Part shown: positions 5,820 through 46,825 of the stretch, in pieces
Layout of the letters: every line of letters begins with the position of its first letter
Numbering within the stretch: position 1 is the stretch's first letter
IMG/VR virus record: IMGVR_UViG_3300032287_003113
Coordinates: 62,001 to 126,000 of that record
Reading direction: 5' to 3' (one strand)
Length of the DNA stretch: 64,000 bases
Position numbers and translations under genes: made by a program
Notes under the pieces: generated by a model
What the model was told of the DNA's origin: nothing
The model's database searches: none
Seen by the model: only the letters and a program-made list of their open reading frames with translations

Positions 5820-6297
5820 CTTTTTTGTTTAATATTTGTTTTAGCAATTCGTTGCGATCCAGCACAACTCCTTGCCCGTCTATGGCTGCTTCCACTGGAT
5901 CTTTGGCATCTTTTTTGATCTGGTGATCCAGCTTGGCTTTGGCCAACTGTAACTGTACCATTTTTAACTTTTTATCTAGCTTGGCAGTTTTGGCTGTGAT
6001 AGCGTGTCCCAACATTACACCAGCTGTTTGTAAGATAACACCCGAAAAGCGTGGCTCTACATTCATGCCCAGATCTATCAGATCTTCAGCTTTGCTCTGT
6101 GCCAACTGTGCCAATTCATCCAGCTCGGTATCACCGGTGTCTAAATTGTGTACTGTGGGTAGTGCAGCATCAATCTTATCTATAGCAAGATTAACTTCGG
6201 TGATTATGTCGCGGTTTTCTTCAATTATCTGCTCGGCTTCTTCGGCAGTAGCATCCGTGGATGGTAGGTTAAACAGCTCTTCTAATTTTTTAGTCAT
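5815..6297 (-). CDS. Helical hypothetical protein, possibly terminase small subunit-like
   Basis: 160 aa, coiled-coil character, ends ..RNELLKQIL; size and context only, no diagnostic motif. Confidence 0.4.
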   Translation of the reverse strand: MTKKLEELFNLPSTDATAEEAEQIIEENRDIITEVNLAIDKIDAALPTVHNLDTGDTELDELAQLAQSKAEDLIDLGMNVEPRFSGVILQTAGVMLGHAITAKTAKLDKKLKMVQLQLAKAKLDHQIKKDAKDPVEAAIDGQGVVLDRNELLKQILNKKV

Positions 6298-6305
6298 AGC
6301 AATAT

Positions 6306-6740
6306 TTATTTGCTACGGCCTTGGTGGAAAATCATATCTTCGGTGACAACTCTAAAGGTCATTCCGTGTGCTCGAGCCCAAGCACGAGCAGCCTCCCATT
6401 TGGCCATGTTCAATATGGCACTGGCTTGATCACGTATGTTTTTGGCGCCTTCTAGCGTGGTTTCTTTTTTGGGTTTGACTTCGACCAATTCAGCACGTTG
6501 GGCACCGCCAGCATCTTGATAGGTAATCAAAAAGTCTGGAACATAAATGGTATTTTTACCTGTCAACGGATTGCGATAGTTGATATGTACTGCCTCGCTA
6601 GCCCAGTTGATTATGCTGGGATTGTTGTCACAGAATTGCATAAAAACAAATTCCCAGCTGCTTCTATATGTAGGCGTTTTATTGCCCACATACTTGGCAG
6701 GGTTCTGTATTTGAAATTTGCCTTGCGAGTATTTGCTCAT
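6306..6740 (-). CDS. gp4: Head completion nuclease (PD-(D/E)xK, TnsA-like fold)
   Basis: YRSSWEFVFMQFCDNNPSIINWASE...YVPDF...EVKP...NMAKWEAA...FRVVTE. Confidence 0.9.
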   Translation of the reverse strand: MSKYSQGKFQIQNPAKYVGNKTPTYRSSWEFVFMQFCDNNPSIINWASEAVHINYRNPLTGKNTIYVPDFLITYQDAGGAQRAELVEVKPKKETTLEGAKNIRDQASAILNMAKWEAARAWARAHGMTFRVVTEDMIFHQGRSK

Positions 6741-7120: not shown

Positions 7121-8595
7121 AATAGACCCCCATAGGAAGCTTCACTTAATGCCGCTGTACTAAAACTGGCACTAAATTCGTTAGCAATGTCTCTTGTTAA
7201 ATCACCAAATGCCGTTGAAATATCGCCGACTAAACTTCCAACTTGGTCCTTGATAAATCCTGATGCTTGATCAATCAATGGTTGTGTTAGCTCAGTTACA
7301 TAGGAACCAACCTGTTGCATAGCATAGGTGGCTGCCATGTTGGTCACTGTGGCCAGGGCCGCTTGAGGGTTTTGTATAGCTGACGCAATTAGATTAATAG
7401 TGGCTCCGCCATTGGGCCCAAGACCTGCGGCTAGTCCACCAATCAGTCCATTGGCCGCGGAGCTTACTACGCCGCCCACGATATTAGACGCTTGTGCTTG
7501 TATCTGTTGCTGTATTTGTGCGGCACTGGTAATGCCCTGTGTTAAACTGCCAAGACTTGGCACACTGAATCCACCGGCATTGACTCCGCCCACACCTGCA
7601 GAAATTGATGTGCCAGTACCAAACAATCTTCCAAACACACTGGGTTGTGCTGATGTTGTACCGGCACCAAAATTTATGGGTGCGGTTGCATCGGTGTATA
7701 GTGGACTAATGCCTGCCAGGTCGGTGATTTGATCTGGCGCACGGTTATATCCACCTTGGCCATTGTCTACCAGGTCTGTTCCGTCTCTTGGAGCAATAGG
7801 ACTTGGCATCTTGTCATAGTGCAAATCAATAAATCCGCCGGCGTTGTTGGCAGTGGTATAGCCTGTTAGATATTTTACTGTTTCATACTGTATGGTCATT
7901 TCGTGACTTAACAAACTGGTTTCGCCATTCACATGATCACCGTGTTTGAACGCAGTGATAGTGGGATTGACCAATTGGTATTCACTAAAATTCTTTTGAT
8001 ACAAGCTGTAAATTCTTATAGCTTGTATGTATTGATAGGCCTGTTGCCCATTTAGGTTGGTACCAACTGTGGGACGTCTTGGACTATAACCCCAATCAAA
8101 GCTGGGACGACTGGCATACTTGTGTGGAGTATTATAGGTGGCGTCAGCATAGTCGGGGTCACGAAAAAAGAAACTGTAGTAGTCATACCAGAAATTTCTT
8201 ACATTGTCGCTTTGGTCATCGTGGAATGATATTTGCACAGGATCATACTTGATGCTATTTTGCACAATGTTTTTACGATTGTAAGCATTGTGTGTTTTGG
8301 TGTCGATAGTAAACTTTGGTAGCGTGGCACTTTTGACCAACATGCCTAATTCTCTTGCTGGAGCATTGCCACTACCCATGCTTTTGTATTGCAAGGTTTG
8401 ATCGGAGATATTTGTAATCAATGGATTAAAATCAAATTCCACATAAAACAAAAATCCATATTTGGGACTTAGTCGGAAATTGTCGTCGGTGAATATTCTT
8501 GCCGCATGGCGGTAGTCATACATTTGCCCGCGAGGATTTGTAACTGTATTTGGGTAATTAACTTGAGACGATGATAAATGTTTATTAATGCTCAT
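7117..8595 (-). CDS. Tail-tube-fold protein (gp19/gp54-like) with Gly/Ala-rich C-terminal extension
   Basis: LVKSATLPKFTIDT...YNRK...KYDPVQISFHDD parallels the adjacent tube protein (VVDIKRP...YNSK...INFRDD). Confidence 0.65.
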   Translation of the reverse strand: MSINKHLSSSQVNYPNTVTNPRGQMYDYRHAARIFTDDNFRLSPKYGFLFYVEFDFNPLITNISDQTLQYKSMGSGNAPARELGMLVKSATLPKFTIDTKTHNAYNRKNIVQNSIKYDPVQISFHDDQSDNVRNFWYDYYSFFFRDPDYADATYNTPHKYASRPSFDWGYSPRRPTVGTNLNGQQAYQYIQAIRIYSLYQKNFSEYQLVNPTITAFKHGDHVNGETSLLSHEMTIQYETVKYLTGYTTANNAGGFIDLHYDKMPSPIAPRDGTDLVDNGQGGYNRAPDQITDLAGISPLYTDATAPINFGAGTTSAQPSVFGRLFGTGTSISAGVGGVNAGGFSVPSLGSLTQGITSAAQIQQQIQAQASNIVGGVVSSAANGLIGGLAAGLGPNGGATINLIASAIQNPQAALATVTNMAATYAMQQVGSYVTELTQPLIDQASGFIKDQVGSLVGDISTAFGDLTRDIANEFSASFSTAALSEASYGGLF

Positions 8596-8612
8596 ACTAA
8601 TATTTATCCAAT

Positions 8613-16237: not shown

Positions 16238-17608
16238 ATGCCACGTTTAAGCCTTTGGCAAGATGGTAAACACTCAAATGATTACAAGTTCATGGATAGA
16301 CGCATATCCGAAATGTTTACCATTGGTGGTACGGGTATCCTGGTCAACAAATACCTGGGCGTAAATACCCAGGGCACCAACAAAGCCACCAGCGCCGCAC
16401 AGGTGTCTGTGGGTTTCAATTTGAGTTTTTCCAATACTACCGGAATCAATGTGGACGATTTTGCATTTGGTCCCGGTATTCCCAGCGGAGCACAGGTAGC
16501 CAGCAAAACCGCAACCACAGTAACATTAAACACAGTGACCACATCTGCTGTGGCCAGCGGAACAACTGTTGGCTTTGGCCCGGATGCTACCAAACCCAGT
16601 TACGCTAACCAAAGTGAACAAAACATACAAGACTTGCTGTGGTTAGAAAATCGTGATCGCAAGTATGATCGTGACGTTTACAAAATGCGTGGCATCTATC
16701 AACGTGCCGACCAAGATTTTGATCTGAGCCAATTTGGCCTGTTCTTGCAAACTGGAACTATCTTTATGGTGTTCCATCTGCGTGACATGGTTGATCAAAT
16801 TGGTCGTAAGTTGATTGCTGGCGATGTGCTAGAATTACAACACCTAAAAGATTACGATGCATTAGACGGAGATTTGCCTGCCGCATTAAAACGTTATTAT
16901 GTAGTAGGTGACGCCAGTTTTGCATCAGAAGGTTTTAGCCCAACTTGGTGGCCACACTTATGGCGTGTTAAACTTAATCCACTGGTAGACAGTCAAGAAT
17001 ACAAAGATATCTTAGATAACATTGCAGCCAGTGATACTACCACTACACCAGTAGGACAAATTCTAAGTACCTACAACACGTTTTTGGATATCAATCAAAG
17101 TATTATCACTCAAGCCGAAATTGATGTGCCAAAAAGTGGTTACGATACCAGTCCAATTTATACTTTACCCACTACTGCTAGCGGCAGTGATCCAATTGGT
17201 GCTCCTATCACTGCGGACAATGCCAGTATTAACTCTGGCAACACCAGTCCTACTGCGGACTCTGGTGTGTCAAGTCCGTTACGCAAGGTGTCTGGTTACT
17301 TGACCGGTGATGGTGTTGCTCCAAATGGTTTGTCTACTGGTGCTGGTGTTGCTTTCCCGGCCAATCCAACCGAAGGAGAATATTTCTTGCGTTTGGATTA
17401 CTTGCCAAATCGTCTGTTCCGCTACAGTGGACGTCATTGGGCTCGAGTAGAAGATGCTGTGAGAACTACCCTGACTCCGGGCACAGATAATAAGACACAA
17501 CGTGGTAGTTATGTAAATAATACTAACACTTACACAGATGCTGATGGTGTGACGCACAACGAACGTCAACCATTGAGTCGTGTACTAACACCGAAAGCAG
17601 ATAATTAA
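16238..17608 (+). CDS. gp14: Neck/head-closure protein (gp14-like) with insertions
   Basis: DLSQFGLFL...GDVLEL core; position immediately before the gp15-like gene. Confidence 0.65.
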   Translation: MPRLSLWQDGKHSNDYKFMDRRISEMFTIGGTGILVNKYLGVNTQGTNKATSAAQVSVGFNLSFSNTTGINVDDFAFGPGIPSGAQVASKTATTVTLNTVTTSAVASGTTVGFGPDATKPSYANQSEQNIQDLLWLENRDRKYDRDVYKMRGIYQRADQDFDLSQFGLFLQTGTIFMVFHLRDMVDQIGRKLIAGDVLELQHLKDYDALDGDLPAALKRYYVVGDASFASEGFSPTWWPHLWRVKLNPLVDSQEYKDILDNIAASDTTTTPVGQILSTYNTFLDINQSIITQAEIDVPKSGYDTSPIYTLPTTASGSDPIGAPITADNASINSGNTSPTADSGVSSPLRKVSGYLTGDGVAPNGLSTGAGVAFPANPTEGEYFLRLDYLPNRLFRYSGRHWARVEDAVRTTLTPGTDNKTQRGSYVNNTNTYTDADGVTHNERQPLSRVLTPKADN

Positions 17609-18984
17609 TGCCAGTTCAATTTGCCTATGATGGACAAATACGCCGTTTTGTCATGCAGTTTGTACGCATGGTATCAAACTTCCAAGTAGAATTTGGAAAG
17701 AATGCCAGCGGTAATCGTACCTTGCAAACTGTTCCTGTGTACTATGGAGATATCAGTCGCCAGGCTGCAATGATTTTAAACAATGGTAGCGAAAATACAC
17801 TCAATGCTGTACCGGCTATGGCTTGTTACATTAGTGGATTAACATATGATCAAAGCAGATTACAAAATCCCTACTACGAAGGTGTGGTTAGAATCAGAGA
17901 ACGCACCTACAACGATGTGGATCAAGAGTACGAACAAAGTCAAGATGGTATCTATACTGTAGAACGACTGATGCCAGCTCCATATAAACTAACTATGAAG
18001 TTGGACATATGGACCAGCAACACAGAACAAAAGCATCAGATGATTGAACAAATGATGCCCTTGTTCAACCCCGGCCTAGAAATACAAAGCACAGACAACT
18101 ATGTAGACTGGTCTAGTCTAAGTGTTGTGCTGTTGACTGATGTGCAATACTCTAGTAGAACTGTGCCGCAAGGCGGAGAAGAAAATATTGATGTGGCTAC
18201 ACTCACATTTGAAATGCCTATATGGCTCAGTCTACCTGCCAAAGTCAAGAAGATGGGTGTTGTTGCACAAATCATTGCCAGTATCTACGACGCACAAGGT
18301 GACCTGAGTCCCGATGTAGTGTTTGCAACACAGGGTTTAATGAGTCAACAAAGATTTACTCCGATGAATTATGAATTGGTCTATGTGGGCAACACCCTGA
18401 CTTTGTATAAAAACAATGCTACCGAAGCTGAAGATGGTGTGGTTTATGGCACCAAGGTGCGTTGGGCCAACCTGGTTAATTTATACGGCAAACTGACCAA
18501 TGGTATCAGCGAAGTTAGATTGACTTTTGCTTATCCAGACGGTCCGCACGAAATTGCTGGTACTGTTGCGTTTAGTCCCACAGATGAAACACAGTTGTTG
18601 TTTACTCCATTTGAAGCCACATTGCCGGCCAATACCTTGGATGCTGTTGATGCCATCATTGATCCAAGAAACGTTACTGTAGACAGCAATATATTAAGTC
18701 CTGCTGCAGGTACAAGATACTTGATATTGAATTCCATTGGCGACATTGCCACTGAAAGTCCTGTTGCTTGGGCTGGTGCTCCAGGTACCAACTTGATCGC
18801 TCGAGCCAACGACATCATTGAATGGAATGGTTCATATTGGATAGTAGCTTTTGACAGTAGAGAGCCTGCTGTGCAGTATGTATCCAACCTAACTACCACT
18901 GTGCAATATCGCTGGACCGGATCAGAGTGGGTCAAGAGTTATGAAGGCCTATACGGATCGGGCGAGTGGAGTTTGGTACTGTAA
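17608..18984 (+). CDS. gp15: Tail terminator / sheath stabiliser with C-terminal extension
   Basis: YDGQIRRFV..F, VPVYYG, MPAPYKLTMKLDIW, QMIEQMMPLFNP, TLTFEMPIW. Confidence 0.85.
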   Translation: MPVQFAYDGQIRRFVMQFVRMVSNFQVEFGKNASGNRTLQTVPVYYGDISRQAAMILNNGSENTLNAVPAMACYISGLTYDQSRLQNPYYEGVVRIRERTYNDVDQEYEQSQDGIYTVERLMPAPYKLTMKLDIWTSNTEQKHQMIEQMMPLFNPGLEIQSTDNYVDWSSLSVVLLTDVQYSSRTVPQGGEENIDVATLTFEMPIWLSLPAKVKKMGVVAQIIASIYDAQGDLSPDVVFATQGLMSQQRFTPMNYELVYVGNTLTLYKNNATEAEDGVVYGTKVRWANLVNLYGKLTNGISEVRLTFAYPDGPHEIAGTVAFSPTDETQLLFTPFEATLPANTLDAVDAIIDPRNVTVDSNILSPAAGTRYLILNSIGDIATESPVAWAGAPGTNLIARANDIIEWNGSYWIVAFDSREPAVQYVSNLTTTVQYRWTGSEWVKSYEGLYGSGEWSLVL

Positions 18985-19412
18985 TGGCCGCACACACCGA
19001 GGGCGTTGGTGCATTAATTTACGCTCGATCATCTAATCGTTACTTGTTCTTGTTGAGAAACAAAAGCCGACATGCTGGATCCTGGGGAATTGTGGGTGGA
19101 AAAATTGAAACAGGTGAGACTGTCATACACGGGCTAGTTAGAGAAATACGTGAAGAAATTGGTGTTGACTATTCTGCTCGTAAATTTATTCCATTAGAAA
19201 CGTTTACCGCAGACAATCGTAAATTTGTTTATTATACATTTGTGGTCAGTGTAGAAGAAGAATTTGTGCCACGCTTGAATGATGAGCATCGTGGATATTG
19301 CTGGGTAGGATTAAATGATCATCCAATGCCGTTGCATCCAGGACTTTGGCGAAGTTTTAATTTTGACATTGTCAAAAAGAAAATTAAAACTTTAGAATCA
19401 ATCTTAAAATAA
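18984..19412 (+). CDS. NUDIX hydrolase
   Basis: GGKIETGETVIHGLVREIREEIG Nudix box; start at the TAATG overlap with the gp15 stop. Confidence 0.9.
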   Translation: MAAHTEGVGALIYARSSNRYLFLLRNKSRHAGSWGIVGGKIETGETVIHGLVREIREEIGVDYSARKFIPLETFTADNRKFVYYTFVVSVEEEFVPRLNDEHRGYCWVGLNDHPMPLHPGLWRSFNFDIVKKKIKTLESILK

Positions 19413-19413
19413 A

Positions 19414-20097
19414 TTAACCAATATCTGCTTCAAGCACAAAATCACGGAAACTGATTTGTCTAAAATTTAATTTATTAACAAGAGCACCCGAACAGTCTGC
19501 TGCAACCGACATCATAATACGTACAAATTCTACATCAGAATAAACATCCATCACAGTTGATAGTGTTTTTACATAAAAAGTATCTTCGGTTGCATTGGTA
19601 TAACCGTCATAGCCCATCAGATAAACTTTTTTGTGTCCGTCAAAGCAGGCCAGGTATGCAGCCAAGGCTCCAGCATCGTATGTTGGGTTTTGTGGGGTTA
19701 AATAAAACTTACCTGGGTATTGTACAATATATTGAGCATTGGTGTAAACGATATGATCGTCACAATAGCCAGACTCTGCAATGGTTTTAACTTTTTCTGC
19801 GTCAACTGCAACTAAAAAATCTGGAGTAAACTCTTGATATATCAAATTACAGGCATAACTTTGTAACTTGTCTCTGGCCAATATTCCGCCTCTGTGATTG
19901 GCAATATGTGCCAAATCAAAATCTTGACGACTGGGTCCATTACCTATTGCAATAGCCTGTGTTGTTGTAAACGAATTAAACACGCTGTTGGCAATATATT
20001 CTGTGCTGGGTTGCCATTCATTGTTGCCAAGTACTAGTTCGGTAACAATGGATTCGCCGGCATAGTTACTGCGATAAAGTTTTTTTATAATTTGCAT
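19414..20097 (-). CDS. Glycosyltransferase-like protein (DUF115/MptE or sialyltransferase-like fold)
   Basis: AIAIGNGPSR...YACN...PDFLVAVD...AG..A...GHKKVYLMGYD. Confidence 0.6.
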   Translation of the reverse strand: MQIIKKLYRSNYAGESIVTELVLGNNEWQPSTEYIANSVFNSFTTTQAIAIGNGPSRQDFDLAHIANHRGGILARDKLQSYACNLIYQEFTPDFLVAVDAEKVKTIAESGYCDDHIVYTNAQYIVQYPGKFYLTPQNPTYDAGALAAYLACFDGHKKVYLMGYDGYTNATEDTFYVKTLSTVMDVYSDVEFVRIMMSVAADCSGALVNKLNFRQISFRDFVLEADIG

Positions 20098-20791: not shown

Positions 20792-22834
20792 TTAATATCT
20801 CCCTACTGCTATTTCGATAGTTGTTATATCATTGCCGTCATAGTCTTCAAGACTTTTTGCAATTATACAACCTGGTTCATATTTTGTTTTGTCTAAACGT
20901 TCTGCTACACCTGGAATATTGCTGGTAACCAGTCTATCGCCTTTGGCTACTGGTCCACGCACCTGACATGGTACACGGCCTGTGAGTGCCACTGGCAAGC
21001 CAGGTTTGGCAGCATTCATCAGGTATGCTGGATCGGTGCTTACTACTCCAGCTGTTCGCGGATCGTGGCTAACGTCTGTGGTTGTTATTTCTGCGGATCC
21101 ACCAAACACAACTACTGTGCCTGGAGCATATTCCGCATCAGCCACATAGTGTTCTGCTAGGTCAGCATACTTGGCTTGGACGCTGACACCGTACACGTTG
21201 TTCCACCAAGCTGTGGTGGATCCAAGATTGATGGCCAAATTAGATGATGGTACAACAAAACCAGATACTGTGATGTTAGCACAGGTCACTGCACCCAATG
21301 ATGTGGCGCCGGTTACTGTTATGCCTGAAGAAAATGTGTTGGCCTGTGATGCCACAAAACCGCTGGTGTCAACCCACTGGGAGCCAGTGCCATCATATAG
21401 GTATTGGAATACAGTATCACTGGCGCTGTCATACCAGGTGTCGCCAGAATATGGATTGGCTGGTGATGTGGTTCCTGTAAAGTTTGTGACTAATGGTCTA
21501 GTATTACGGAATGCTCCACTACCTACGTTGAGGTTTCCTGTGATTGCAGCTCCACCAGACACCTGCAATGCACCGGTAACGTTGCTGGTACTGGCTGTGG
21601 TATTGGATAGCACCAAGCTACCAAAAATCACATTGCCACGTGTGCCAGAGTTGACACCGCCCAAGGTTTCAGTGGCATCTGCCAAATATTCCAATGCTCC
21701 TGTGGAATTTTCCCATCCCAGGAACGCATGTTTGTCTGCACCTTTGTAGTAGTGGAATCGAACACCGATGTCACGACCATCATCCGACGACAATGCTGCC
21801 AAATTGGCAAATGTGTGTAATTCAATAACTGAGTCAGTGACCGACAAGTTGTTGGAACCAATGGTCACTGTGTTACCCAGCACAGTCAAGTTTCCTTGAA
21901 CTGTCAGCCCGCTTGCATTCCATCCACCAGCTTTGGTTGTTGCTGTACCGGCAAGATTTTCTACGTAAAATTCTAATTCACCGTTGCTGGCGCCTGCACT
22001 GGTTTCTGCCAGAATATAAGTGAATCCGTCAACTGATTTGACTCCACCCAATGAGCTCCAAGCATTACCTGCGCCATAACCTTCAAAACTGCTAATTTGC
22101 GTGTTATATCGTACATGTCCCAGTTGTGGACTGATACTGTTGAGACCACCGCCGGGCCGTTGAGCAGTATTACCTGTTGGCAATGGTACAAACTGTATAT
22201 CACTGTTTAATGTGGTAATGCCATTTAATACACCTGCACTATTACCGCCCAATGGGACTGTGGTGTTACCAAATCTCACGTCAGCTGTGGCCCAACTTGG
22301 TGCATATCCTGCGCCTTCTGAACGCAAGAATGTACCAATTGCACCTGCTGTAATGAAAGTGGTCACGTTGGTGTCTTGCTGAATCATCAACTGACCAGCA
22401 GATCCGCCTGTGATGTTTGTGGCACTGGTCGCTGTGGTGGCTGTACCAACAGTCAGTGCTGATCCAGAAACCCAAGTTGGTGAACTAGTACCACCCGAAA
22501 TAAGAAATTGTCCAGCTGTACCTGCTAGACTTAGGCCCAGTCCAGTTGCAGTACTGTAAGGGACGGCCCCTGCGGCAGCAGTTAATACACTACCAGTTCC
22601 GCCATAGGCCAATGCCACAGCATTACCTTGCCAGAATGATCCACTACTAAAAGTTTTGTTTAATACAGTTTGTGTAGCACCTGTGGTTAATACTGTGGCG
22701 CCGCCGCCTGCTGTAGTTCCGTCGTGTAAACGTAGGGTTTTGGCGTCAGTATCGTAGGTAATTTCACCGGCGGCACCAGTAAAAGCGTTGTTTTGTGTTG
22801 TAGTTCCTCGTCTAAACTGTACTTGGGTTGCCAT
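20792..22834 (-). CDS. Tail fibre-like protein: Mtd-N-like N-terminus and chaperone-like C-terminus
   Basis: QVQFRRGTT...GAAGEITYDTD..TLRLHDG..AGG; C-terminal AKYADLAEHY domain. Confidence 0.75.
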   Translation of the reverse strand: MATQVQFRRGTTTQNNAFTGAAGEITYDTDAKTLRLHDGTTAGGGATVLTTGATQTVLNKTFSSGSFWQGNAVALAYGGTGSVLTAAAGAVPYSTATGLGLSLAGTAGQFLISGGTSSPTWVSGSALTVGTATTATSATNITGGSAGQLMIQQDTNVTTFITAGAIGTFLRSEGAGYAPSWATADVRFGNTTVPLGGNSAGVLNGITTLNSDIQFVPLPTGNTAQRPGGGLNSISPQLGHVRYNTQISSFEGYGAGNAWSSLGGVKSVDGFTYILAETSAGASNGELEFYVENLAGTATTKAGGWNASGLTVQGNLTVLGNTVTIGSNNLSVTDSVIELHTFANLAALSSDDGRDIGVRFHYYKGADKHAFLGWENSTGALEYLADATETLGGVNSGTRGNVIFGSLVLSNTTASTSNVTGALQVSGGAAITGNLNVGSGAFRNTRPLVTNFTGTTSPANPYSGDTWYDSASDTVFQYLYDGTGSQWVDTSGFVASQANTFSSGITVTGATSLGAVTCANITVSGFVVPSSNLAINLGSTTAWWNNVYGVSVQAKYADLAEHYVADAEYAPGTVVVFGGSAEITTTDVSHDPRTAGVVSTDPAYLMNAAKPGLPVALTGRVPCQVRGPVAKGDRLVTSNIPGVAERLDKTKYEPGCIIAKSLEDYDGNDITTIEIAVGRY

Positions 22835-39281: not shown

Positions 39282-39311
39282 AAAAAAATAGCAGCCGAAG
39301 CTGCTATTTTT
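39282..39311 (-). terminator. Intrinsic terminator with cUUCGg tetraloop
   Basis: AAAAATAGCAGC-TTCG-GCTGCTATTTTTTT on -. Confidence 0.9.
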
Positions 39312-39326
39312 ATCAATCAAATTTGA

Positions 39327-39830
39327 TTAATGTGTAACTACGTTGGCAAATGTGCTTGTAGCCACTTGAGTCTGATGTCTGTAACGCATTTTGTTATTGG
39401 ACTGATCATACACATGTTTTGTAGTAATACGACTAGCATAAAAAGCTGTGTTACTTGTGGTGTAACCAGTAATTGTGCATGTGCTTGCTCCACTAGCTGG
39501 TGCGGCGTTTGCTGCATCTGCGCCAGCGGCCAATGTGCATACTGTAACACTAGCGTTGCTGTGTGTTGCGCCGTTTACTGCGCCTACAGCGTTGGCAACC
39601 AAAAATGACTTTGCGCCTTTTTGTGCAATGATGTAAGCATTGGAGTGTAGTACACCTGCTGCTGTACGGAATTGAACCTTGATAGTTTTAACACCTGTGG
39701 TAGTTACCCACTGTGGGATACCGCCAACAGCGCCAAAGTAATTTGAAGTTCCTACTGCACTACCAGTGATTCGTTGATCTGATAATGTACCATCTGCTTG
39801 CTTGTGAGCAATTTTTAATCCTCTTGCCAT
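39327..39830 (-). CDS. Hypothetical, probably abundant structural protein (own promoter and terminator)
   Basis: Monocistronic unit: ATAAATA 39901-07, AGGAGA SD, UUCG terminator. Confidence 0.65.
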   Translation of the reverse strand: MARGLKIAHKQADGTLSDQRITGSAVGTSNYFGAVGGIPQWVTTTGVKTIKVQFRTAAGVLHSNAYIIAQKGAKSFLVANAVGAVNGATHSNASVTVCTLAAGADAANAAPASGASTCTITGYTTSNTAFYASRITTKHVYDQSNNKMRYRHQTQVATSTFANVVTH

Positions 39831-39903
39831 TTTGTTTCTCCTGTTTTAGCGTTCTAGGCTACTCAAGGTAGGCTTACCTGAGAGTTTCATACGAACAAAG
39901 TAT

Positions 39904-40785
39904 TTATCTAATTTGGGTATAAACGTATTCAGCCCATAGCCGATGCCCTTCGGGGTCGGGATGGCAAGTACTGCCTTTGAGATTGTACGGACTGTCTCCA
40001 AGGAATCTCCAGCGTGTGCCCACACGATCCATGATATCTAAAAACTCAGACTTGCGTTCAGGGTTTTGTGCAATGTATTTTTTTGTCAACGGGTCAATGC
40101 TCATCTGCCCTATAAATGGTACAGGCTGTTGATAGTTATCAAAGTTAAAGTTATCTTGTATTACATCGCACCAAGTTTTTTTTAATAGTAAAGGACTGGA
40201 AACACCGGGCCAAAAATCTGTAAATGCTCGACCAACATGTGCCGATACCGCAGGTACGTTTTTAAAATACGTTTCTAAATTGAGCAACAAGTATTGTTCC
40301 ACTTGCCGCAAAAATTGTTCAATGGTGTCACTGGCTTTCCACATTTGTTGATATGGTTCTTCAACACGTATTCGGCGGGTGTACTCTGCTTCGCGGAGGT
40401 CTTCAGTTAGTGTTACCACCACATAGATTTTTTTATAATTGGCCTGTTGAATAAATGGTTGCAGGTCTTGTAGTTTTTCCAGCATCCAGTAGTTACTACA
40501 GCCTGGTCTAGCCAAATTGACCCAATCGGCATCTAGTAGACGGCTAAGATGTCTACCTGCTATCTGTTCCTGTCTACAAGGGTCGTTACTGGCTTTGTCC
40601 CAATCTATTGTGCCCAAATGATCGCCCCAGGTCCACGAATCCCCAACCATGATCAACAAAGTATCTCGTCCTTGTATATCTTCTTCGTACCACTGTCGAT
40701 AACTGTACACGTTGTTCTGACTCCAGTCTGTGTGCCTGTGATCGATACTTTCTTCAAAGGAGAGTGTGTGGTAAAATTTAAACAT
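39904..40785 (-). CDS. SGNH/GDSL-like hydrolase or acyltransferase
   Basis: VGDSWTWG, NLARPGCSN, CHPDPEGHRLWA. Confidence 0.7.
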   Translation of the reverse strand: MFKFYHTLSFEESIDHRHTDWSQNNVYSYRQWYEEDIQGRDTLLIMVGDSWTWGDHLGTIDWDKASNDPCRQEQIAGRHLSRLLDADWVNLARPGCSNYWMLEKLQDLQPFIQQANYKKIYVVVTLTEDLREAEYTRRIRVEEPYQQMWKASDTIEQFLRQVEQYLLLNLETYFKNVPAVSAHVGRAFTDFWPGVSSPLLLKKTWCDVIQDNFNFDNYQQPVPFIGQMSIDPLTKKYIAQNPERKSEFLDIMDRVGTRWRFLGDSPYNLKGSTCHPDPEGHRLWAEYVYTQIR

Positions 40786-41764
40786 TGTAAAGTGTTAATA
40801 TCCTAGTATCATAATTGATGGTGTTAATGCATTCTTGATTGTGTACAAATATTTCTTGATTGTGTTTGTATAACTGTGGCAAATCTTCTGCCATCAATCT
40901 TTGAAATTCGTCAGTTAATGCAGTAAATCGCCGTTGCGGGTCAGTTATGTTATCAAAACCATAGTCTACACCCACTGGCATCTTAAACCCCATTTCAACC
41001 AGTCTACTGATAGTGCCAGGATTACTAAATGGTAAAATGATATGCCCTTTGATCAACGGCTCAAATGTTTTTTCTGTAATGTGTATTAAGTCATCACGTA
41101 AAAAATTACTTTCACAATAGATGCTGACATAGCTGTCTAAATAAAACGCATTAGGCGCAGGCTGAAATGCTCCTACTATGTCACAACCTTCTACTGTAAT
41201 TCCACGACTACGATTACTTACATATCCATCATTGAAGTTTTTGACAAATTCATACAAATTGGTTCTGTAACTGAACTCACGTCCGGTCATGCTCAAAAAC
41301 TTTTTTGCTTTGGGCCGATCAAAATCCAATTGGGGTATTTGGTATGCTGCTGGGCCGCTGTGATGATGCAGGTATAACTTATTATACGGAACTGTTTCTG
41401 TATAATAACTGCGATATCGATTCCACATAAAATCCCAGGGCACAATGTCTACATCAGCCAGTTTTAATTTGGGACTTTGATTTACTGTGAGGTAAACACG
41501 ATGCGGATGATCAAAGTTACTGATAAACTCACAGAACTTGGTGTGTTCATAATCGCCAGTGTTGACCAAATCATAAAAAATAATTGTTCGACTTGATCTG
41601 GCACGAGTGGTATATGTAGCTAACCATTCTGCGTCATGTGTGTTGTAATGATTGACCAAGGGCCAAAATAAAACCTGCGGATCAAACGTGTTAGCGTCAA
41701 GCCCGAGCAATTCAAGATGGTATGGTAAGTCGTCGCCCTCAATCCCGCGGATATTTTTGATCAT
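40778..41764 (-). CDS. Glycosyltransferase-like protein (GT-B, GT10-like C-terminus)
   Basis: KKFLSM...R...SIYCESNF...ITEKTFEPL..GH...GFK. Confidence 0.55.
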   Translation of the reverse strand: MIKNIRGIEGDDLPYHLELLGLDANTFDPQVLFWPLVNHYNTHDAEWLATYTTRARSSRTIIFYDLVNTGDYEHTKFCEFISNFDHPHRVYLTVNQSPKLKLADVDIVPWDFMWNRYRSYYTETVPYNKLYLHHHSGPAAYQIPQLDFDRPKAKKFLSMTGREFSYRTNLYEFVKNFNDGYVSNRSRGITVEGCDIVGAFQPAPNAFYLDSYVSIYCESNFLRDDLIHITEKTFEPLIKGHIILPFSNPGTISRLVEMGFKMPVGVDYGFDNITDPQRRFTALTDEFQRLMAEDLPQLYKHNQEIFVHNQECINTINYDTRILTLYNV

Positions 41765-42452
41765 AGAATTCTAATAGAAGTTCAGCAATACGCCGGTGAC
41801 CCGCAATGTTGGGGTGAAACAGCTTGCCCGTAAAATATTCATTTTCTCTTATGTCAGGCAAATCATATTCTTTGCCAGTTAATGCTCGAGTAATAGTAGT
41901 TGGATAAATTAGATCTTTACGCAACATGTGTCCGTAGTTGTCAGTTACCAGTTGATCAAAGTAGCTGAAGAATACGCAATCTATTTCATTGTAAAAACAA
42001 AATTGTTGAAATTGAAAAACTGTTTGCACTCCTAAAAATTCATTGTACAGCCCTGACTCCACATACCGGTATGTTTGCTGTGCGTAGTCTTGCATGTGCA
42101 TTACGCAGTTGGGTGGTCTACCTGTAAAGTGTATGTTGCTGGTACTGTAAGGTGCCTCCGACGTTATGTTTATAAATTCGTTGTCTTGATTGTTATAACT
42201 CAAATACCTAGATGGTGCTGTGAGTCCAATCATAAAAATTAATTTGTAATTTTCAAAGTCTGGACGCTGTTTTATAAAATCAAATAGTTGTACTATGGTG
42301 TGTCCAATACTGCTAGCCGGTACGCCCATGTTTACATATTCTATACCAAGATGGTCGGCCACGTGTTTGACCCAGGGGTCTTCTCTAGGAATGTCTAGTT
42401 CGCTGCCAAATGTCCACGAGTCTCCAAAGGCCACCAATAACTGTTTCTTCAT
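41739..42452 (-). CDS. SGNH/GDSL-like hydrolase or acyltransferase
   Basis: Start corrected to MKKQLLVAFGDSWTFG (42452); NMGVPASS; FHPNIAGHRRIA. Confidence 0.7.
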   Translation of the reverse strand: MKKQLLVAFGDSWTFGSELDIPREDPWVKHVADHLGIEYVNMGVPASSIGHTIVQLFDFIKQRPDFENYKLIFMIGLTAPSRYLSYNNQDNEFINITSEAPYSTSNIHFTGRPPNCVMHMQDYAQQTYRYVESGLYNEFLGVQTVFQFQQFCFYNEIDCVFFSYFDQLVTDNYGHMLRKDLIYPTTITRALTGKEYDLPDIRENEYFTGKLFHPNIAGHRRIAELLLEFYDQKYPRD

Positions 42453-42484
42453 TATTATATTTACATGATAAAACCACAACCAAC

Positions 42485-42509
42485 AAAAAAGGCTCCGAAG
42501 AGCCTTTTT
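42485..42509 (-). terminator. Intrinsic terminator after MCP (cUUCGg loop)
   Basis: AAAAAGGCTC-TTCG-GAGCCTTTTTT on -. Confidence 0.9.
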
Positions 42510-42542
42510 GTTCCTTCCCATCCCTGGGGTGGATATTCCTTT

Positions 42543-43721
42543 TTACTGGAACGATAGGTTTGATACAGAGATCTCACCAACGTAGTCACCAGCATTACCT
42601 AGCGAAGACGCTGTGTTTGTCAACTCTACATAACCATAACGTGTCATAAATGATACGACTGGTTCGAATGTAGATGGATCTAGAACAACACCAGAACTCA
42701 TCAATGGGATATATGGGCAATAGAACGCAGCTGCATCAGCTTCGCTTGAACCCTTATAACCAACCAATACAGCCTGACTGTCGTTTGCATAACCGTCAAC
42801 ATATACCTTCATTGCACCGTTCAATGTACCAACAAACTTGGTGTTTGTAGGAGCTTCGAATGTACCTTCTGTTGTACGAGCAAATGCACTTGTTGTAGCA
42901 CTTTGTAGTACTGTCAAAGCAGCTGGACTTACAACTGCCCAGTTACCAGCACCACGACGTGTACGCTGAGCGATCTTGTTAGCAACACGGTTAACTAGAA
43001 CTGCCAAAGCGGCATGCTCATCACCAACGAATGTAGCTGTACCAGAAACGGCAGCTTGGTCATATGCTTCATCAGTAGCGGCAAGAGCACGTAGGGAACC
43101 AAGAATCTCTTGATCAATCTCTACAGTAATTTCTTGTGCTAGGGCAGCCATAATTTCTGCCTCAACATCCAAACCGTGCATAGACTGTGCGTCTTGTGCA
43201 GCTTCAAATGTCCAACGAGCACTTAACTTACGTGTTTTAGCTTCTACAACTTGTTTCAAAATCTGAACGTTAATACGGTTACCAGCAACACCTTCTAGTG
43301 TACTAGTTGTATTAGCCATACCAGTAGAGTTACTACCAGAGTATGCTGTTGCAATTTTGAATGGGCTCAATGCCTCATCACCAGCTGTTGTGCTTGTCTG
43401 ATATGCAGATGAATCTGTAACAGAATCAGCATAACGTACACGCAATGTGTGGATTTGAGCTACTGGACCTGTCATTGGCTGTACACCAACGATTTCGTTG
43501 GCGATAACTGTTGGCATTACACGACGGATAACTGGTAGAATTACACGGTTTAGTGTAGCTACGTTACCTGCTTGTGTAGAGCCAGCTGTTGCGTTCTCAG
43601 CCAACATTTTGCGTGTATTCTCAAGGATTACACCCATTGTAGTTCTTTTAGAACCATTTAGACCTTCTAACAGGGCTTCTTTTGTTTCGCCCCAACGGCC
43701 TTCTAATAATGCTTGTGTCAT
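42543..43721 (-). CDS. gp23: Major capsid protein
   Basis: GVQPMTGP, VEAKTRKL.A.WT.E.AQD...HGLD.E.E, EIDQEI, FYCPYIPL, P.TFEP...MTRYG. Confidence 0.97.
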   Translation of the reverse strand: MTQALLEGRWGETKEALLEGLNGSKRTTMGVILENTRKMLAENATAGSTQAGNVATLNRVILPVIRRVMPTVIANEIVGVQPMTGPVAQIHTLRVRYADSVTDSSAYQTSTTAGDEALSPFKIATAYSGSNSTGMANTTSTLEGVAGNRINVQILKQVVEAKTRKLSARWTFEAAQDAQSMHGLDVEAEIMAALAQEITVEIDQEILGSLRALAATDEAYDQAAVSGTATFVGDEHAALAVLVNRVANKIAQRTRRGAGNWAVVSPAALTVLQSATTSAFARTTEGTFEAPTNTKFVGTLNGAMKVYVDGYANDSQAVLVGYKGSSEADAAAFYCPYIPLMSSGVVLDPSTFEPVVSFMTRYGYVELTNTASSLGNAGDYVGEISVSNLSFQ

Positions 43722-46568: not shown

Positions 46569-46802
46569 TTACATTCCGAGAGGGGCGCCACCAGGTTCTG
46601 CAGGTGGTTGATATTGTTTTGCTACTGCTTCCAGCTTTTTTTCATGCTCAAGTTTGCGTACATCGTGGGCTTGTCTTAGCTGGTTTAGGTGTGATAGAGT
46701 CAAGCGAGTTTTGCGGCTATCCGACATCGTAAGCGTACTTTGGTCTGCTTTTTCGTCGTGATAACCATGAGGTGCTGGGTCAAATAGTTCACTAATAATC
46801 AT
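46569..46802 (-). CDS. Small hypothetical head-cluster protein
   Basis: MIISELFD...DSRKTRLTL..LN.LR; TAAATA 5 nt upstream of ATG. Confidence 0.65.
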   Translation of the reverse strand: MIISELFDPAPHGYHDEKADQSTLTMSDSRKTRLTLSHLNQLRQAHDVRKLEHEKKLEAVAKQYQPPAEPGGAPLGM

Positions 46803-46825
46803 AATACTATTTAACCTTTTATTTG

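What the first reader, a model, noticed from the sequence alone, without database searches (positions are those of the whole stretch)
39904..42463. Late-expressed SGNH-GT-SGNH cassette wedged between capsid and fibre genes
Three overlapping genes follow the MCP terminator and have their own TAAATA box (42458-63): two SGNH-like proteins (GDSW...HP, lacking the usual Asp of DxxH) flanking a GT-like protein. A second GT-like gene (19414-20097) closes the other end of the Ser/Thr-rich fibre array. Virion glycosylation by structural-operon glycosyltransferases is known in some actinophages. Inference: a system for glycosylating and O-acylating virions or the host surface.
Basis: inference. Interest (0 to 1): 0.65.

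Follow-up and report, generated by a model that had tools for sequence, protein, structure and literature searches.

The report
Accessory sugar-modifying cassette beside phage capsid gene
A freshwater jumbo phage carries, right after its capsid gene, an optional three-gene set (esterase-like, sugar-transferase, esterase-like) that most likely decorates and trims sugars on phage particles, and the transferase belongs to a very large virus-only enzyme family that no database describes.

Summary
Three overlapping minus-strand genes follow the capsid-gene terminator and a TAAATA box: A (41739-42452), B (40778-41764) and C (39904-40785). C has a confident SGNH fold and A is its distant homologue. 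Both keep the GDSW serine and the HPN histidine but lack the block-V Asp and the block-III Asn. B has a confident GT-B glycosyltransferase fold, closest to T4 beta-glucosyltransferase and GT10 fucosyltransferases, and matches no Pfam model.

- **Accessory.** Gene order is strict in 31 related contigs, yet 53 of 56 other capsid relatives lack the cassette. A 91%-complete relative has no B homologue.
- **Same slot, other paralogues.** In some lineages other B-family paralogues occupy the position after the capsid gene.
- **Large family.** The B superfamily has about 13,600 cluster representatives. It was not found in cultured phages and is nearly absent from prokaryote genomes.
- **Sugar genes elsewhere.** The genome encodes further GT-B paralogues (one paired with an SGNH gene), sugar dehydratases, an aminotransferase, methyltransferases and GT9/17/34-like enzymes.

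The enzyme classes are shown. Late timing and virion proteins as the target remain inference. The second "GT-like" gene (19414-20097) is only weakly MptE/DUF115-like.

The parts
42543..43721 (-). Major capsid protein gene (T4 gp23-type), upstream neighbour of the cassette
   Evidence: PHROG 138 major head protein E 2e-99. About 68% nt identity to the MCP genes of Rak2-like jumbo phages. Heavily covered by contigs in four freshwater metatranscriptomes.
42486..42509 (-). Intrinsic terminator hairpin after the MCP gene
   Evidence: 10-bp stem, TTCG loop, T-run. A hairpin is conserved in orthologous loci. The listed RNA contigs over the MCP 3' end stop at 42523/42524, and summed depth drops from hundreds to 0-2 across it (contigs only).
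42458..42463 (-). TAAATA late-type promoter box, 5 nt before the start codon of A and with no Shine-Dalgarno sequence
   Evidence: Sequence. TAAATA lies within 40 nt upstream of 37 of 221 called genes; 28 of those genes have the longer ATAAATA, which occurs only 45 times genome-wide. TAAATA-N5-ATG occurs 4 times in the window against 0.84 expected. Orthologues keep TAAATA or TAAGTA at the same spacing.
41739..42452 (-). Gene A: SGNH-like Ser-His protein, 237 aa
   Evidence: Pfam Lipase_GDSL E 1.9e-4, below the cut-off. hhalign to the C family gives probability 97.9%. Invariant: G10 D11 S12 W13, and H213 P214 N215 followed by G218 H219. There is no Asp at His-3 and no block III Asn. No match in cultured phages. 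Sparse RNA contigs in one metatranscriptome.
40778..41764 (-). Gene B: GT-B fold glycosyltransferase, 328 aa, founding a family without a Pfam model
   Evidence: AF2 pLDDT 93.1, pTM 0.90. Foldseek best hit is H. pylori alpha1,3-FucT, E 2e-4, probability 0.99. All top 50 VIA hits are GT-B: T4 BGT Z 11.7, GT10 enzymes Z about 10.2-10.3. No Pfam or PHROG hit. E218, E231, K232 and G259 are invariant across the superfamily.
39904..40785 (-). Gene C: SGNH-fold Ser-His enzyme, 293 aa
   Evidence: Pfam Lipase_GDSL 28.2 bits, above the 23.6 cut-off. AF2 pLDDT 87.1. All top 50 VIA hits are SGNH, and CE2 esterases cover the full length. Invariant: S50, G95, E128 (in place of the block III Asn) and H275; S272 (at least 90% conserved) stands in place of the Asp.
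39901..39906 (-). Second TAAATA box, overlapping the stop codon of C; candidate promoter of D167
   Evidence: Sequence. A 474-nt RNA contig with no mismatches spans 39402-39875.
39327..39830 (-). D167: small, basic, Ala/Thr/Ser/Gly-rich, fast-evolving protein in its own promoter-terminator unit
   Evidence: Own box, then a terminator. 21.6% Ser+Thr, net charge +10. Covered by RNA contigs in 3 of 4 metatranscriptomes. E-values to relatives range from 1e-105 to 1e-5, or there is no match. No Pfam or PHROG hit.
39282..39311 (-). Terminator hairpin after D167
   Evidence: Read from the sequence: a GC-rich stem with a TTCG loop and a T-run.
19414..20097 (-).
   Evidence: Pfam MptE-like E 0.026, 14.7 bits vs cut-off 34.6. 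5 of 29 homologues hit, best E 0.0015. ESM Atlas nearest Pfam-bearing cluster is MptE-like at 0.89. A GNGPS motif is seen in the sequence. No PDB match by profile. Fold not tested.

Best explanation
A-B-C is an accessory glycan-tailoring operon of a freshwater T4-like jumbo phage. It is probably transcribed late.

B is a cytoplasmic GT-B glycosyltransferase that moves a sugar from a nucleotide-sugar donor onto an acceptor. A and C are cytoplasmic SGNH-type Ser-His enzymes that add or remove O-acyl groups (probably acetyl) on the same glycan or its precursors. They would thereby fix which hydroxyls stay open for further sugars.

The most likely acceptors are phage structural proteins made at the same time: the capsid, the abundant small protein D167, or the Ser/Thr-rich fibres. 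The cassette would then be one optional module of a genome-wide, phage-encoded system that coats virions with unusual sugars.

Shown: gene structure, folds, conserved Ser/His and E...EK residues, accessory distribution, motif conservation, and the sugar-pathway genes elsewhere in the genome.

Inferred: late timing, enzymatic activity, the donor, the direction of the acyl reaction, and the acceptor.
For: Folds.
- B is GT-B: pLDDT 93, and all top 50 VIA hits are GT-B.
- C is SGNH, and A is homologous to C.
- The catalytic Ser and His are invariant in the aligned orthologue sets (B orthologues span 44-97% identity).

Location of action. No N-terminal signal peptide is visible. In A the catalytic Ser is residue 12. 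So the proteins would act in the cytoplasm, where virions assemble.

Position and signals.
- The cassette sits directly after the MCP terminator with a TAAATA box. That motif precedes the portal, protease and fibre genes.
- The box is conserved as TAAATA or TAAGTA at the same spacing in orthologues.

Linkage to the capsid locus.
- Order MCP-A-B-C-D167-E186 is kept in 31 loci.
- In other lineages the same slot after the MCP gene holds other paralogues of the B superfamily (L121, L149, L165/L167).

SGNH-GT coupling. A second overlapping pair (a C-like SGNH, E 1e-21, followed by a B paralogue) lies elsewhere in the genome.

Genome context. Four further B paralogues; GT9-, GT17- and GT34-like genes; NDP-hexose 4,6-dehydratase-like SDRs; GalE; a DegT/PseC-like aminotransferase; C- and FkbM-type methyltransferases; radical SAM enzymes.

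Transcription in nature. A and B are found as sparse contigs in one metatranscriptome in which the MCP gene is heavily represented. This fits low-abundance enzymes rather than structural proteins.

Precedents.
- Glycans have been observed on the capsid and tail-tube subunits of mycobacteriophages (reported in PMC12619734, citing Freeman 2023). Putative GTs in mycobacteriophage Maravista are read as suggesting capsid glycosylation (PMC11256854).
- Ser-rich bacterial adhesins are glycosylated in the cytoplasm, and O-acetylation by Asp2 gates further glucosylation (PMC7948813).
Against: - No acceptor is identified.
- Ser/Thr-rich MCP surface loops occur equally in relatives without the cassette.
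- The MCP C-terminus is conserved with cassette-free cultured phages.
- Ser/Thr richness is ordinary for tail fibres.
- The cassette is dispensable. 53 of 56 MCP relatives lack it, and a 91%-complete relative has no B homologue.
- A and C lack the Asn and Asp of canonical SGNH enzymes, so activity is not assured.
- Late timing rests on a motif only. The RNA data are assembled contigs, which cannot give timing or levels.
- The complex prediction could not be run.
Confidence: 0.4

Rival explanations
1. Host envelope remodelling. B and the SGNH enzymes act on host lipid-linked or nucleotide-linked precursors of lipopolysaccharide, capsule or another surface glycan during infection. The effect would be to block superinfection or to stop progeny being lost on cell debris.
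For: - The genome also encodes a GT9 (heptosyltransferase-like) protein and an outer-membrane beta-barrel-like protein.
- Cytoplasmic GT-B enzymes commonly build lipid-linked glycans.
- SGNH enzymes commonly act on polysaccharide O-acetyl groups: CE2/CE3 esterases, PatB and OatA are among the structural hits.
- An accessory, patchy distribution fits host-specific adaptation.
Against: - The linkage to the capsid gene is fixed, and other paralogues recur in the same slot.
- The box type is shared with structural genes.
- Changing the surface late in a lytic cycle brings less obvious benefit.
- No flippase, polymerase or membrane-anchored component is seen next to the cassette.
Confidence: 0.2
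2. DNA glycosylation. B is a DNA glycosyltransferase like T4 beta-glucosyltransferase and protects phage DNA from host nucleases.
For: - T4 BGT is the top VIA match (Z 11.7, 260 residues aligned) and T4 alpha-GT also appears (Z 9.7).
- A dCMP deaminase is encoded.
- The record is only about 51% complete.
Against: - The lead of BGT over unrelated GT-B enzymes is about 1 Z unit, which counts as a tie.
- The only thymidylate-synthase-family gene scores as a true thymidylate synthase, above the NCBIfam equivalog cut-offs. No other member of that family, such as a base hydroxymethylase, turned up in 220 kb.
- Two conserved SGNH partners and a position in the structural module are not expected for DNA modification.
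- Five paralogues in one genome is unusual for that role.
Confidence: 0.07
3. Nucleotide-sugar or small-molecule tailoring. The three enzymes finish a soluble or lipid-bound glycoconjugate (for example by deacetylating and glycosylating a precursor) that is not attached to virions by them. Alternatively, A and C are catalytically dead adaptors of B.
For: - The canonical Asn and Asp are lost in A and C.
- B-family genes sit next to radical SAM and sugar-nucleotide enzymes in this genome and in distant viral contigs.
- Another SGNH-like gene lies in a cluster with a thymidylate synthase, an SDR and an aminotransferase.
Against: - Ser and His are strictly conserved, and CE2-type Ser-His dyad esterases (own knowledge) are among the best full-length structural matches.
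- The cassette is separated by tens of kilobases from the sugar-pathway islands.
Confidence: 0.13

Closest known systems
Mycobacteriophage virion glycosylation (glycans reported on capsid and tail-tube subunits; Freeman et al. 2023, as cited in PMC12619734; PMC11256854)
   Same: Phage-encoded glycosyltransferase genes sit next to the capsid gene. The system is accessory, present only in some lineages. The enzymes are cytoplasmic and co-located with structural genes.
   Different: - The host and phage type differ (Gram-negative-type T4-like jumbo phage versus siphoviruses).
- B has no detectable sequence relation to any Pfam GT family.
- SGNH partners flank the GT.
- No Ser/Thr-rich C-terminal acceptor tail is evident on the MCP.
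- Glycosylation is not demonstrated here.
Serine-rich-repeat adhesin maturation in Gram-positive bacteria (GtfA/B, GtfC, Nss/Gly plus the O-acetyltransferase Asp2; PMC5578698, PMC7948813)
   Same: - Ser/Thr-rich fibrous proteins are O-glycosylated in the cytoplasm by GT-B enzymes.
- A Ser-His-type acyl enzyme's O-acetylation gates further sugar addition.
- GtfC-type enzymes are among B's structural matches (9htx Foldseek probability 0.99; 3rhz Z 9.8).
   Different: - No sequence homology was detected.
- No accessory Sec export is involved.
- Asp2 was not compared structurally here.
- The analogy is functional only.
CAZy GT10 alpha1,3/4-fucosyltransferases (H. pylori FucT, 2NZW/2NZX/5ZOI)
   Same: - GT-B fold, and best Foldseek hit (E 2e-4, probability 0.99) with VIA Z 10.3.
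- B has an invariant H-I-T-E-K stretch after an E-S-N stretch in the C-terminal domain. It resembles the GT10 donor-site Tyr246/Glu249/Lys250 (PMC11468063; PMC4202792).
- The nearest Pfam-bearing ESM clusters carry PF00852 (score 0.83, a lead only).
   Different: - The PF00852 HMM finds neither B, its paralogues nor 43 distant relatives.
- About 10-12% identity in structural alignments.
- Residue-level equivalence was not verified.
- The SDRs in the genome look dTDP/UDP-type rather than GDP-mannose dehydratase.
T4 beta-glucosyltransferase (DNA hmC glucosylation, 1C3J/1BGT)
   Same: A compact phage GT-B of similar size. Top VIA hit: Z 11.7, rmsd 4.7 A, 260 residues aligned.
   Different: - 9% identity.
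- No further thymidylate-synthase-family gene (the family that includes base hydroxymethylases) was found in the 220-kb record.
- B sits in the structural module with SGNH partners.
SGNH carbohydrate esterases with a Ser-His dyad (CE2; 4XVH, 2WAO, 2W9X, 3U37)
   Same: SGNH fold with a small N-terminal beta element. These are the only hits that cover C end to end (Z about 11). As in CE2 (own knowledge), the catalytic acid of DxxH is missing.
   Different: - 13-14% identity.
- C is cytoplasmic and phage-encoded.
- The block III Asn is replaced by an invariant Glu.
- The substrate is unknown.

Membership tests
SGNH/GDSL hydrolase superfamily (proteins A and C) | SGNH flavodoxin-like fold | tested here: met
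   C: model pLDDT 87, and all top 50 VIA hits are SGNH, Z up to 12.3. A: not folded; homologous to C by hhalign, probability 97.9% over 85 columns.
SGNH/GDSL hydrolase superfamily (proteins A and C) | Pfam PF00657 at or above the gathering score | tested here: inconclusive
   C 28.2 bits against 23.6 (met). A 22.1 bits (just below).
SGNH/GDSL hydrolase superfamily (proteins A and C) | Block I GDS(L) nucleophile Ser and block V His | tested here: met
   GDSW Ser and HPN His are invariant in both families.
SGNH/GDSL hydrolase superfamily (proteins A and C) | Block III Asn (oxyanion hole) and block V Asp of DxxH | tested here: not met
   C has TLTED with an invariant Glu128, and Ser at His-3. A has GLT, and Lys at His-3. 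This fits a Ser-His dyad variant. Activity is untested.
GT-B glycosyltransferases (protein B) | Two Rossmann-like domains of the GT-B fold | tested here: met
   pLDDT 93.1, pTM 0.90. All top 50 VIA hits and all listed Foldseek hits at E <= 0.001 are GT-B enzymes.
CAZy GT10 fucosyltransferases (protein B) | Match to the family HMM (PF00852) | tested here: not met
   No hit at E <= 1 for B. None in the whole genome at E <= 10. None in 43 distant relatives.
CAZy GT10 fucosyltransferases (protein B) | Donor-site Tyr-x-x-Glu-Lys motif and N-domain catalytic Glu | tested here: inconclusive
   B has an invariant H228...E231-K232, and E218 is invariant. The motif in GT10 is described in PMC11468063 and PMC4202792. 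Structural equivalence of residues could not be checked.
T4-type DNA glucosyltransferase system | A hydroxymethyl-pyrimidine pathway encoded alongside | tested here: not met
   The single thymidylate-synthase-family gene scores as a true thymidylate synthase (339.7 bits against 327). The record is only 51% complete.
Phage virion glycosylation system (mycobacteriophage type) | GT gene(s) adjacent to the capsid gene | tested here: met
   A-B-C start 90 nt after the MCP stop. The order is conserved in 31 loci.
Phage virion glycosylation system (mycobacteriophage type) | Glycans attached to capsid or tail proteins | not testable with these tools
   Needs glycoproteomics. The proxy test (Ser/Thr-rich MCP loops against cassette presence) showed no association.
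T4-type late promoter | TATAAATA-like box upstream of late genes, recognised by a gp55-type factor | tested here: inconclusive
   The TAAATA core is concentrated upstream of the portal, protease and fibre genes. The site before A reads GTAAATA. A gp55 homologue was not searched for, and timing was not measured.
MptE-like/DUF115 (Maf-type transferases) for ORF 19414-20097 | Pfam PF01973 at or above the gathering score | tested here: not met
   14.7 bits against 34.6. 5 of 29 homologues give weak hits, best E 0.0015.

The most novel reading that the evidence does not exclude
B founds a very large GT-B glycosyltransferase family. It has about 10,900 50%-identity clusters at E <= 1e-10, no Pfam model and no hit in 50,697 cultured-phage records. 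Only one hit turned up in 185,579 prokaryote species genomes. Together with dyad-type SGNH partners, this family would build and O-acyl-edit a glycan coat on capsids and fibres of environmental jumbo phages. Swappable paralogues in a hot spot after the capsid gene would act as a cassette system for varying the virion surface.
Probability: 0.22. Interest if true: 0.8.

Novelty: new variant of a known kind. Interest (0 to 1): 0.55.

Why it matters
Protein glycosylation of phage particles is documented only for a few actinophages. If abundant freshwater jumbo phages carry swappable sugar-transferase/esterase modules next to the capsid gene, virion glycan coats may be common in nature. Such coats would bear on host recognition, particle stability, and evasion of host or grazer recognition.

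Apart from the acceptor question, the work exposes a very large glycosyltransferase family that current family databases and cultured-phage collections miss. It also shows a phage genome with an unusually rich deoxy-, amino- and methyl-sugar toolkit.

Tried and rejected
1. Capsid loop test. Cassette-bearing phages seemed to have an extra Ser/Thr-rich MCP loop compared with cultured relatives. With 29 scorable MCPs, cassette-free close relatives have the same loops (mean Ser+Thr 6.1 vs 6.7-6.9). Rejected.
2. GT10 membership by sequence. PF00852 finds nothing, and profile searches of the PDB gave only chance hits.
3. Fusion partners. Long members of the B superfamily are tandem duplications with no known extra domain.
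4. Cultured relatives. tblastn of A, B, C, a B paralogue and a distant B-like protein against 50,697 phage records gave no match.
5. D167 against the genes that follow the MCP gene in Serratia phage BF and Vibrio phage 2.275.O. No similarity.
6. Nonulosonic-acid route for the MptE-like ORF. No NeuB in the record. The profile of the ORF's family gives only chance PDB hits.
The scan with A1 found one MAG contig.
9. The moraphage paper (PMC12619734) describes another lineage and is used only for its statements on phage glycosyltransferases.

No alternative genetic code was needed.
Full report
**What the window is.** The window is bases 62001-126000 of a 219,879-bp IMG/VR viral record, estimated 51% complete. 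Its major capsid protein (MCP) gene (42543-43721, minus strand) is a T4 gp23-type gene: PHROG 138, E 2e-99. It is about 68% identical in DNA to the MCP genes of Rak2-like jumbo phages such as Serratia BF, Yersinia fHe-Yen9-04 and Vibrio 2.275.O. Near-identical DNA occurs in freshwater metagenomes from several studies. So this is an uncultured freshwater T4-like jumbo phage.

**Checking the observation.**
- A: its longest frame starts at 42521, inside the MCP terminator. All orthologues start at the ATG at 42452 (MKKQLL...GDSW), giving 237 aa.
- B: 40778-41764, overlapping A by 26 nt.
- C: 39904-40785, overlapping B by 8 nt.

After the MCP stop comes a 10-bp hairpin with a TTCG loop and a T-run (42486-42509). 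TAAATA follows at 42458-42463, then five bases, then the ATG, with no Shine-Dalgarno sequence.

**Protein identities.**
- C passes the Pfam Lipase_GDSL cut-off (28.2 vs 23.6 bits). A falls just short at 22.1.
- A 27-sequence alignment gave an AlphaFold model of C with pLDDT 87.1. Foldseek and the Foldseek-independent VIA search return only SGNH enzymes. Z reaches 12.3, and CE2 esterases are the hits that cover the full length.
- A is a distant homologue of C (hhalign probability 97.9%).
- In both families the GDSW serine and the HPN histidine are invariant. The Asp of DxxH is replaced by Lys in A and Ser in C. The block III Asn is replaced by Thr in A (GLT) and by an invariant Glu in C (TLTED). 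The best reading is a Ser-His dyad variant, but activity is untested.
- B has no Pfam or PHROG match. A 54-sequence alignment gave a model with pLDDT 93.1 and pTM 0.90.
- The best Foldseek hit for B is H. pylori alpha1,3-fucosyltransferase (E 2e-4, probability 0.99).
- All top 50 VIA hits for B are GT-B glycosyltransferases. T4 beta-glucosyltransferase leads (Z 11.7, rmsd 4.7 A, 260 residues aligned), and GT10 enzymes follow at Z about 10.2-10.3. These values are effectively tied.
- Across B and its distant relatives only E218, E231, K232 and G259 are invariant. The H-I-T-E-K stretch resembles the GT10 donor site Tyr246/Glu249/Lys250 (PMC11468063, PMC4202792). I could not verify residue equivalence, and the GT10 HMM detects nothing.

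B is thus a GT-B enzyme of an undescribed family, possibly a remote GT10 relative.

**Distribution.**
- B has 148 word-search homologues, many on contigs of 290-366 kb. A scan of IMG/VR gave 31 orthologous loci. All that reach far enough share the order prohead protease - scaffold - MCP - A - B - C - D167 - E186 - F104 - G160 - H660.
- A scan with the MCP itself gave a different picture. Of 56 further relatives (MCP 79-95% identical) with at least 1.5 kb downstream, 53 lack A-B-C. In several of these the MCP gene is followed within about 0.2-1 kb by D167 and then E186.
- On an MCP tree, 16 of 19 cassette-bearing rows fall in one well-supported clade that also holds one cassette-free row. At least 3-4 gains or losses are needed.
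- Cassette-free relatives do not carry B elsewhere. A 318-kb, 91%-complete record has no match at all.
- Cultured relatives have other small genes in this slot.
- In some lineages the slot is filled by other paralogues of the B superfamily (L121, L149, L165/L167).

So 'wedged' is accurate. This is an accessory cassette in a hot spot between the head and fibre modules.

**The B superfamily.**
- The same genome has four further paralogues. One lies directly behind, and overlaps, a C-like SGNH gene (E 1e-21). The SGNH-then-GT pairing therefore recurs.
- A profile of B, its paralogues and distant viral relatives finds 13,639 representatives of 50%-identity clusters at E <= 1e-3, and 10,854 at E <= 1e-10.
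- None of 43 members scanned has a significant Pfam hit (best E 0.0076). Long members are tandem duplications.
- tblastn of three different members finds nothing in 50,697 cultured-phage records.
- A pattern scan of 185,579 prokaryote species genomes finds a single MAG contig (sensitivity is limited by the two patterns used).
- ESM Atlas neighbours are 89-100% viral.

**Genome context.** Outside the window the record encodes the following:
- five SDR sugar-nucleotide enzymes: three or four dTDP-glucose-4,6-dehydratase-like proteins, all below the equivalog cut-off, and one GalE above it;
- a DegT/PseC-like aminotransferase;
- a sugar C-methyltransferase and two FkbM methyltransferases;
- a split transketolase;
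- several radical SAM/SPASM proteins;
- GT9-, GT17- and GT34-like transferases.

Two further SGNH-like frames exist. The only thymidylate-synthase-family gene is a genuine thymidylate synthase, which argues against hydroxymethyl-base DNA glycosylation. NeuB was not found.

**Expression signals.**
- Genome-wide, 28 genes have ATAAATA within 40 nt upstream, although the heptamer occurs only 45 times in all. 37 of 221 called genes have the TAAATA core there.
- The genes include those for the portal, the prohead protease, fibre proteins and the neighbour of the gp15-like protein.
- TAAATA-N5-ATG occurs four times in the window against 0.84 expected.
- In orthologous loci where A directly follows the terminator, the terminator is followed by TAAATA or TAAGTA 4-5 nt before the start codon of A in all but one.
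- If the T4 spacing applied (own knowledge), transcription would start at the A of the ATG, giving a leaderless mRNA. This is inference.
- A second TAAATA overlaps the stop codon of C (39901-39906). It heads D167, which ends in its own terminator.
- Contigs of four freshwater metatranscriptomes cover the MCP gene heavily. The listed contigs over its 3' end stop at 42523/42524, just before the terminator. D167 is covered in three runs, A and B only sparsely in one run, and C not at all.
- Contigs cannot give levels or timing. The uneven pattern argues against mere DNA carry-over and fits abundant structural transcripts next to scarce enzyme transcripts.

**Interpretation.** The enzyme classes, their coupling and the accessory nature are well supported. 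The proteins show no visible signal peptides, so they should act in the cytoplasm. The capsid-adjacent position, the late-type box and the repeated use of the slot by GT paralogues favour phage structural proteins as acceptors. In that reading A and C would set or remove O-acyl groups. This parallels mycobacteriophage virion glycosylation and the O-acetyl gating of glycosylation in serine-rich adhesins (PMC7948813). I put this at about 0.4.

| Reading | Confidence |
|---|---|
| Virion structural proteins as acceptor | about 0.4 |
| Host surface-glycan remodelling | 0.2 |
| Soluble or lipid-linked glycoconjugate tailoring, or dead adaptors | 0.13 |
| DNA glycosylation | 0.07 |

My one acceptor test, Ser/Thr-rich MCP loops against cassette presence, was negative.

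**The second 'GT-like' gene (19414-20097).** The ORF is real and closes the fibre array next to a NUDIX gene. Its family is large, with 707 homologues. Its only link to transferases is a recurrent sub-threshold MptE-like/DUF115 signal and a GNGPS motif. It remains unconfirmed.

**Verdict.** This is a new variant of a known kind: phage-encoded glycosylation genes in a structural module. Its transferase family is undescribed and very large.

Noticed in passing
window 6295-6308, 8593-8606, 42450-42463, 46800-46813 (all minus strand): A class of genes has the TAAATA box exactly 5 nt before the ATG and no Shine-Dalgarno sequence (4 sites against 0.84 expected). This suggests leaderless late mRNAs in this phage group. 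Orthologues of A keep TAAATA or TAAGTA at the same spacing.
   Followed up: partly
window 39282-39906 (minus strand): D167 is a monocistronic unit with its own TAAATA box (overlapping the stop codon of C), a 70-nt leader with a Shine-Dalgarno sequence, and a strong terminator. It is basic, Ala/Thr/Ser/Gly-rich and hypervariable among relatives. It is represented in three of four metatranscriptomes and matches no family. It is a candidate abundant virion decoration or acceptor protein.
   Followed up: partly
G000:C1:13600-24700 (locus L087), outside the window: A glycan island holds a GT9-like gene, a sugar C-methyltransferase, three NDP-hexose dehydratase-like SDRs, two FkbM methyltransferases, GT17- and GT34-like genes, a split transketolase and radical SAM/SPASM genes. 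Nearby lie a DctP solute-binding protein, an outer-membrane beta-barrel-like protein and a dCMP deaminase.
   Followed up: partly
G000:C1:55399-58653 (locus L004): A second overlapping SGNH-then-GT-B pair lies directly upstream of a 324-aa ORF that I read by eye as gp32-like (no Pfam hit). The SGNH is C-like (E 1e-21) and the GT is a B paralogue. It is far from the structural module.
   Followed up: partly
G000:C1:155089-158433 (locus L002): Two tandem B-family paralogues are followed by a radical SAM gene. The radical SAM neighbourhood recurs in distant viral contigs (L041, L075).
   Followed up: partly
loci L121, L149, L165, L167 (relatives of the window): In cassette-free lineages the slot just after the MCP gene is occupied by other paralogues of the B superfamily. 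The position looks like a hot spot for swapping glycosyltransferases.
   Followed up: partly
loci L029/L030 and L005: Some cassette-bearing relatives have an extra gene in front of A. In L029/L030 it is an A-like SGNH gene (E 3e-12). In L005 it is an unexamined 242-aa ORF.
   Followed up: no
G000:C1:176200-177930 (locus L088): A further SGNH-like ORF (261 aa) sits in a same-strand cluster with a genuine thymidylate synthase, an SDR and a DegT/PseC-like aminotransferase. This is an odd mix of nucleotide and sugar metabolism.
   Followed up: no
window 18966-19412 (+) and 17608-18984 (+): A NUDIX hydrolase (E 1e-18) lies between the gp15-like tail-sheath stabiliser gene and the MptE-like ORF. A sugar-nucleotide or cap hydrolase role is possible.
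   Followed up: no
G000:C1:200148-201176 (locus L089:3148-4176): A radical SAM protein has a weak viperin-family similarity (E 1.5e-14, below the cut-off). It lies next to the GalE gene.
   Followed up: no
window 20792-22834 (minus strand): A fibre protein has an N-terminal Mtd_N (major tropism determinant) domain (E 2.6e-13). No retroelement was looked for.
   Followed up: no
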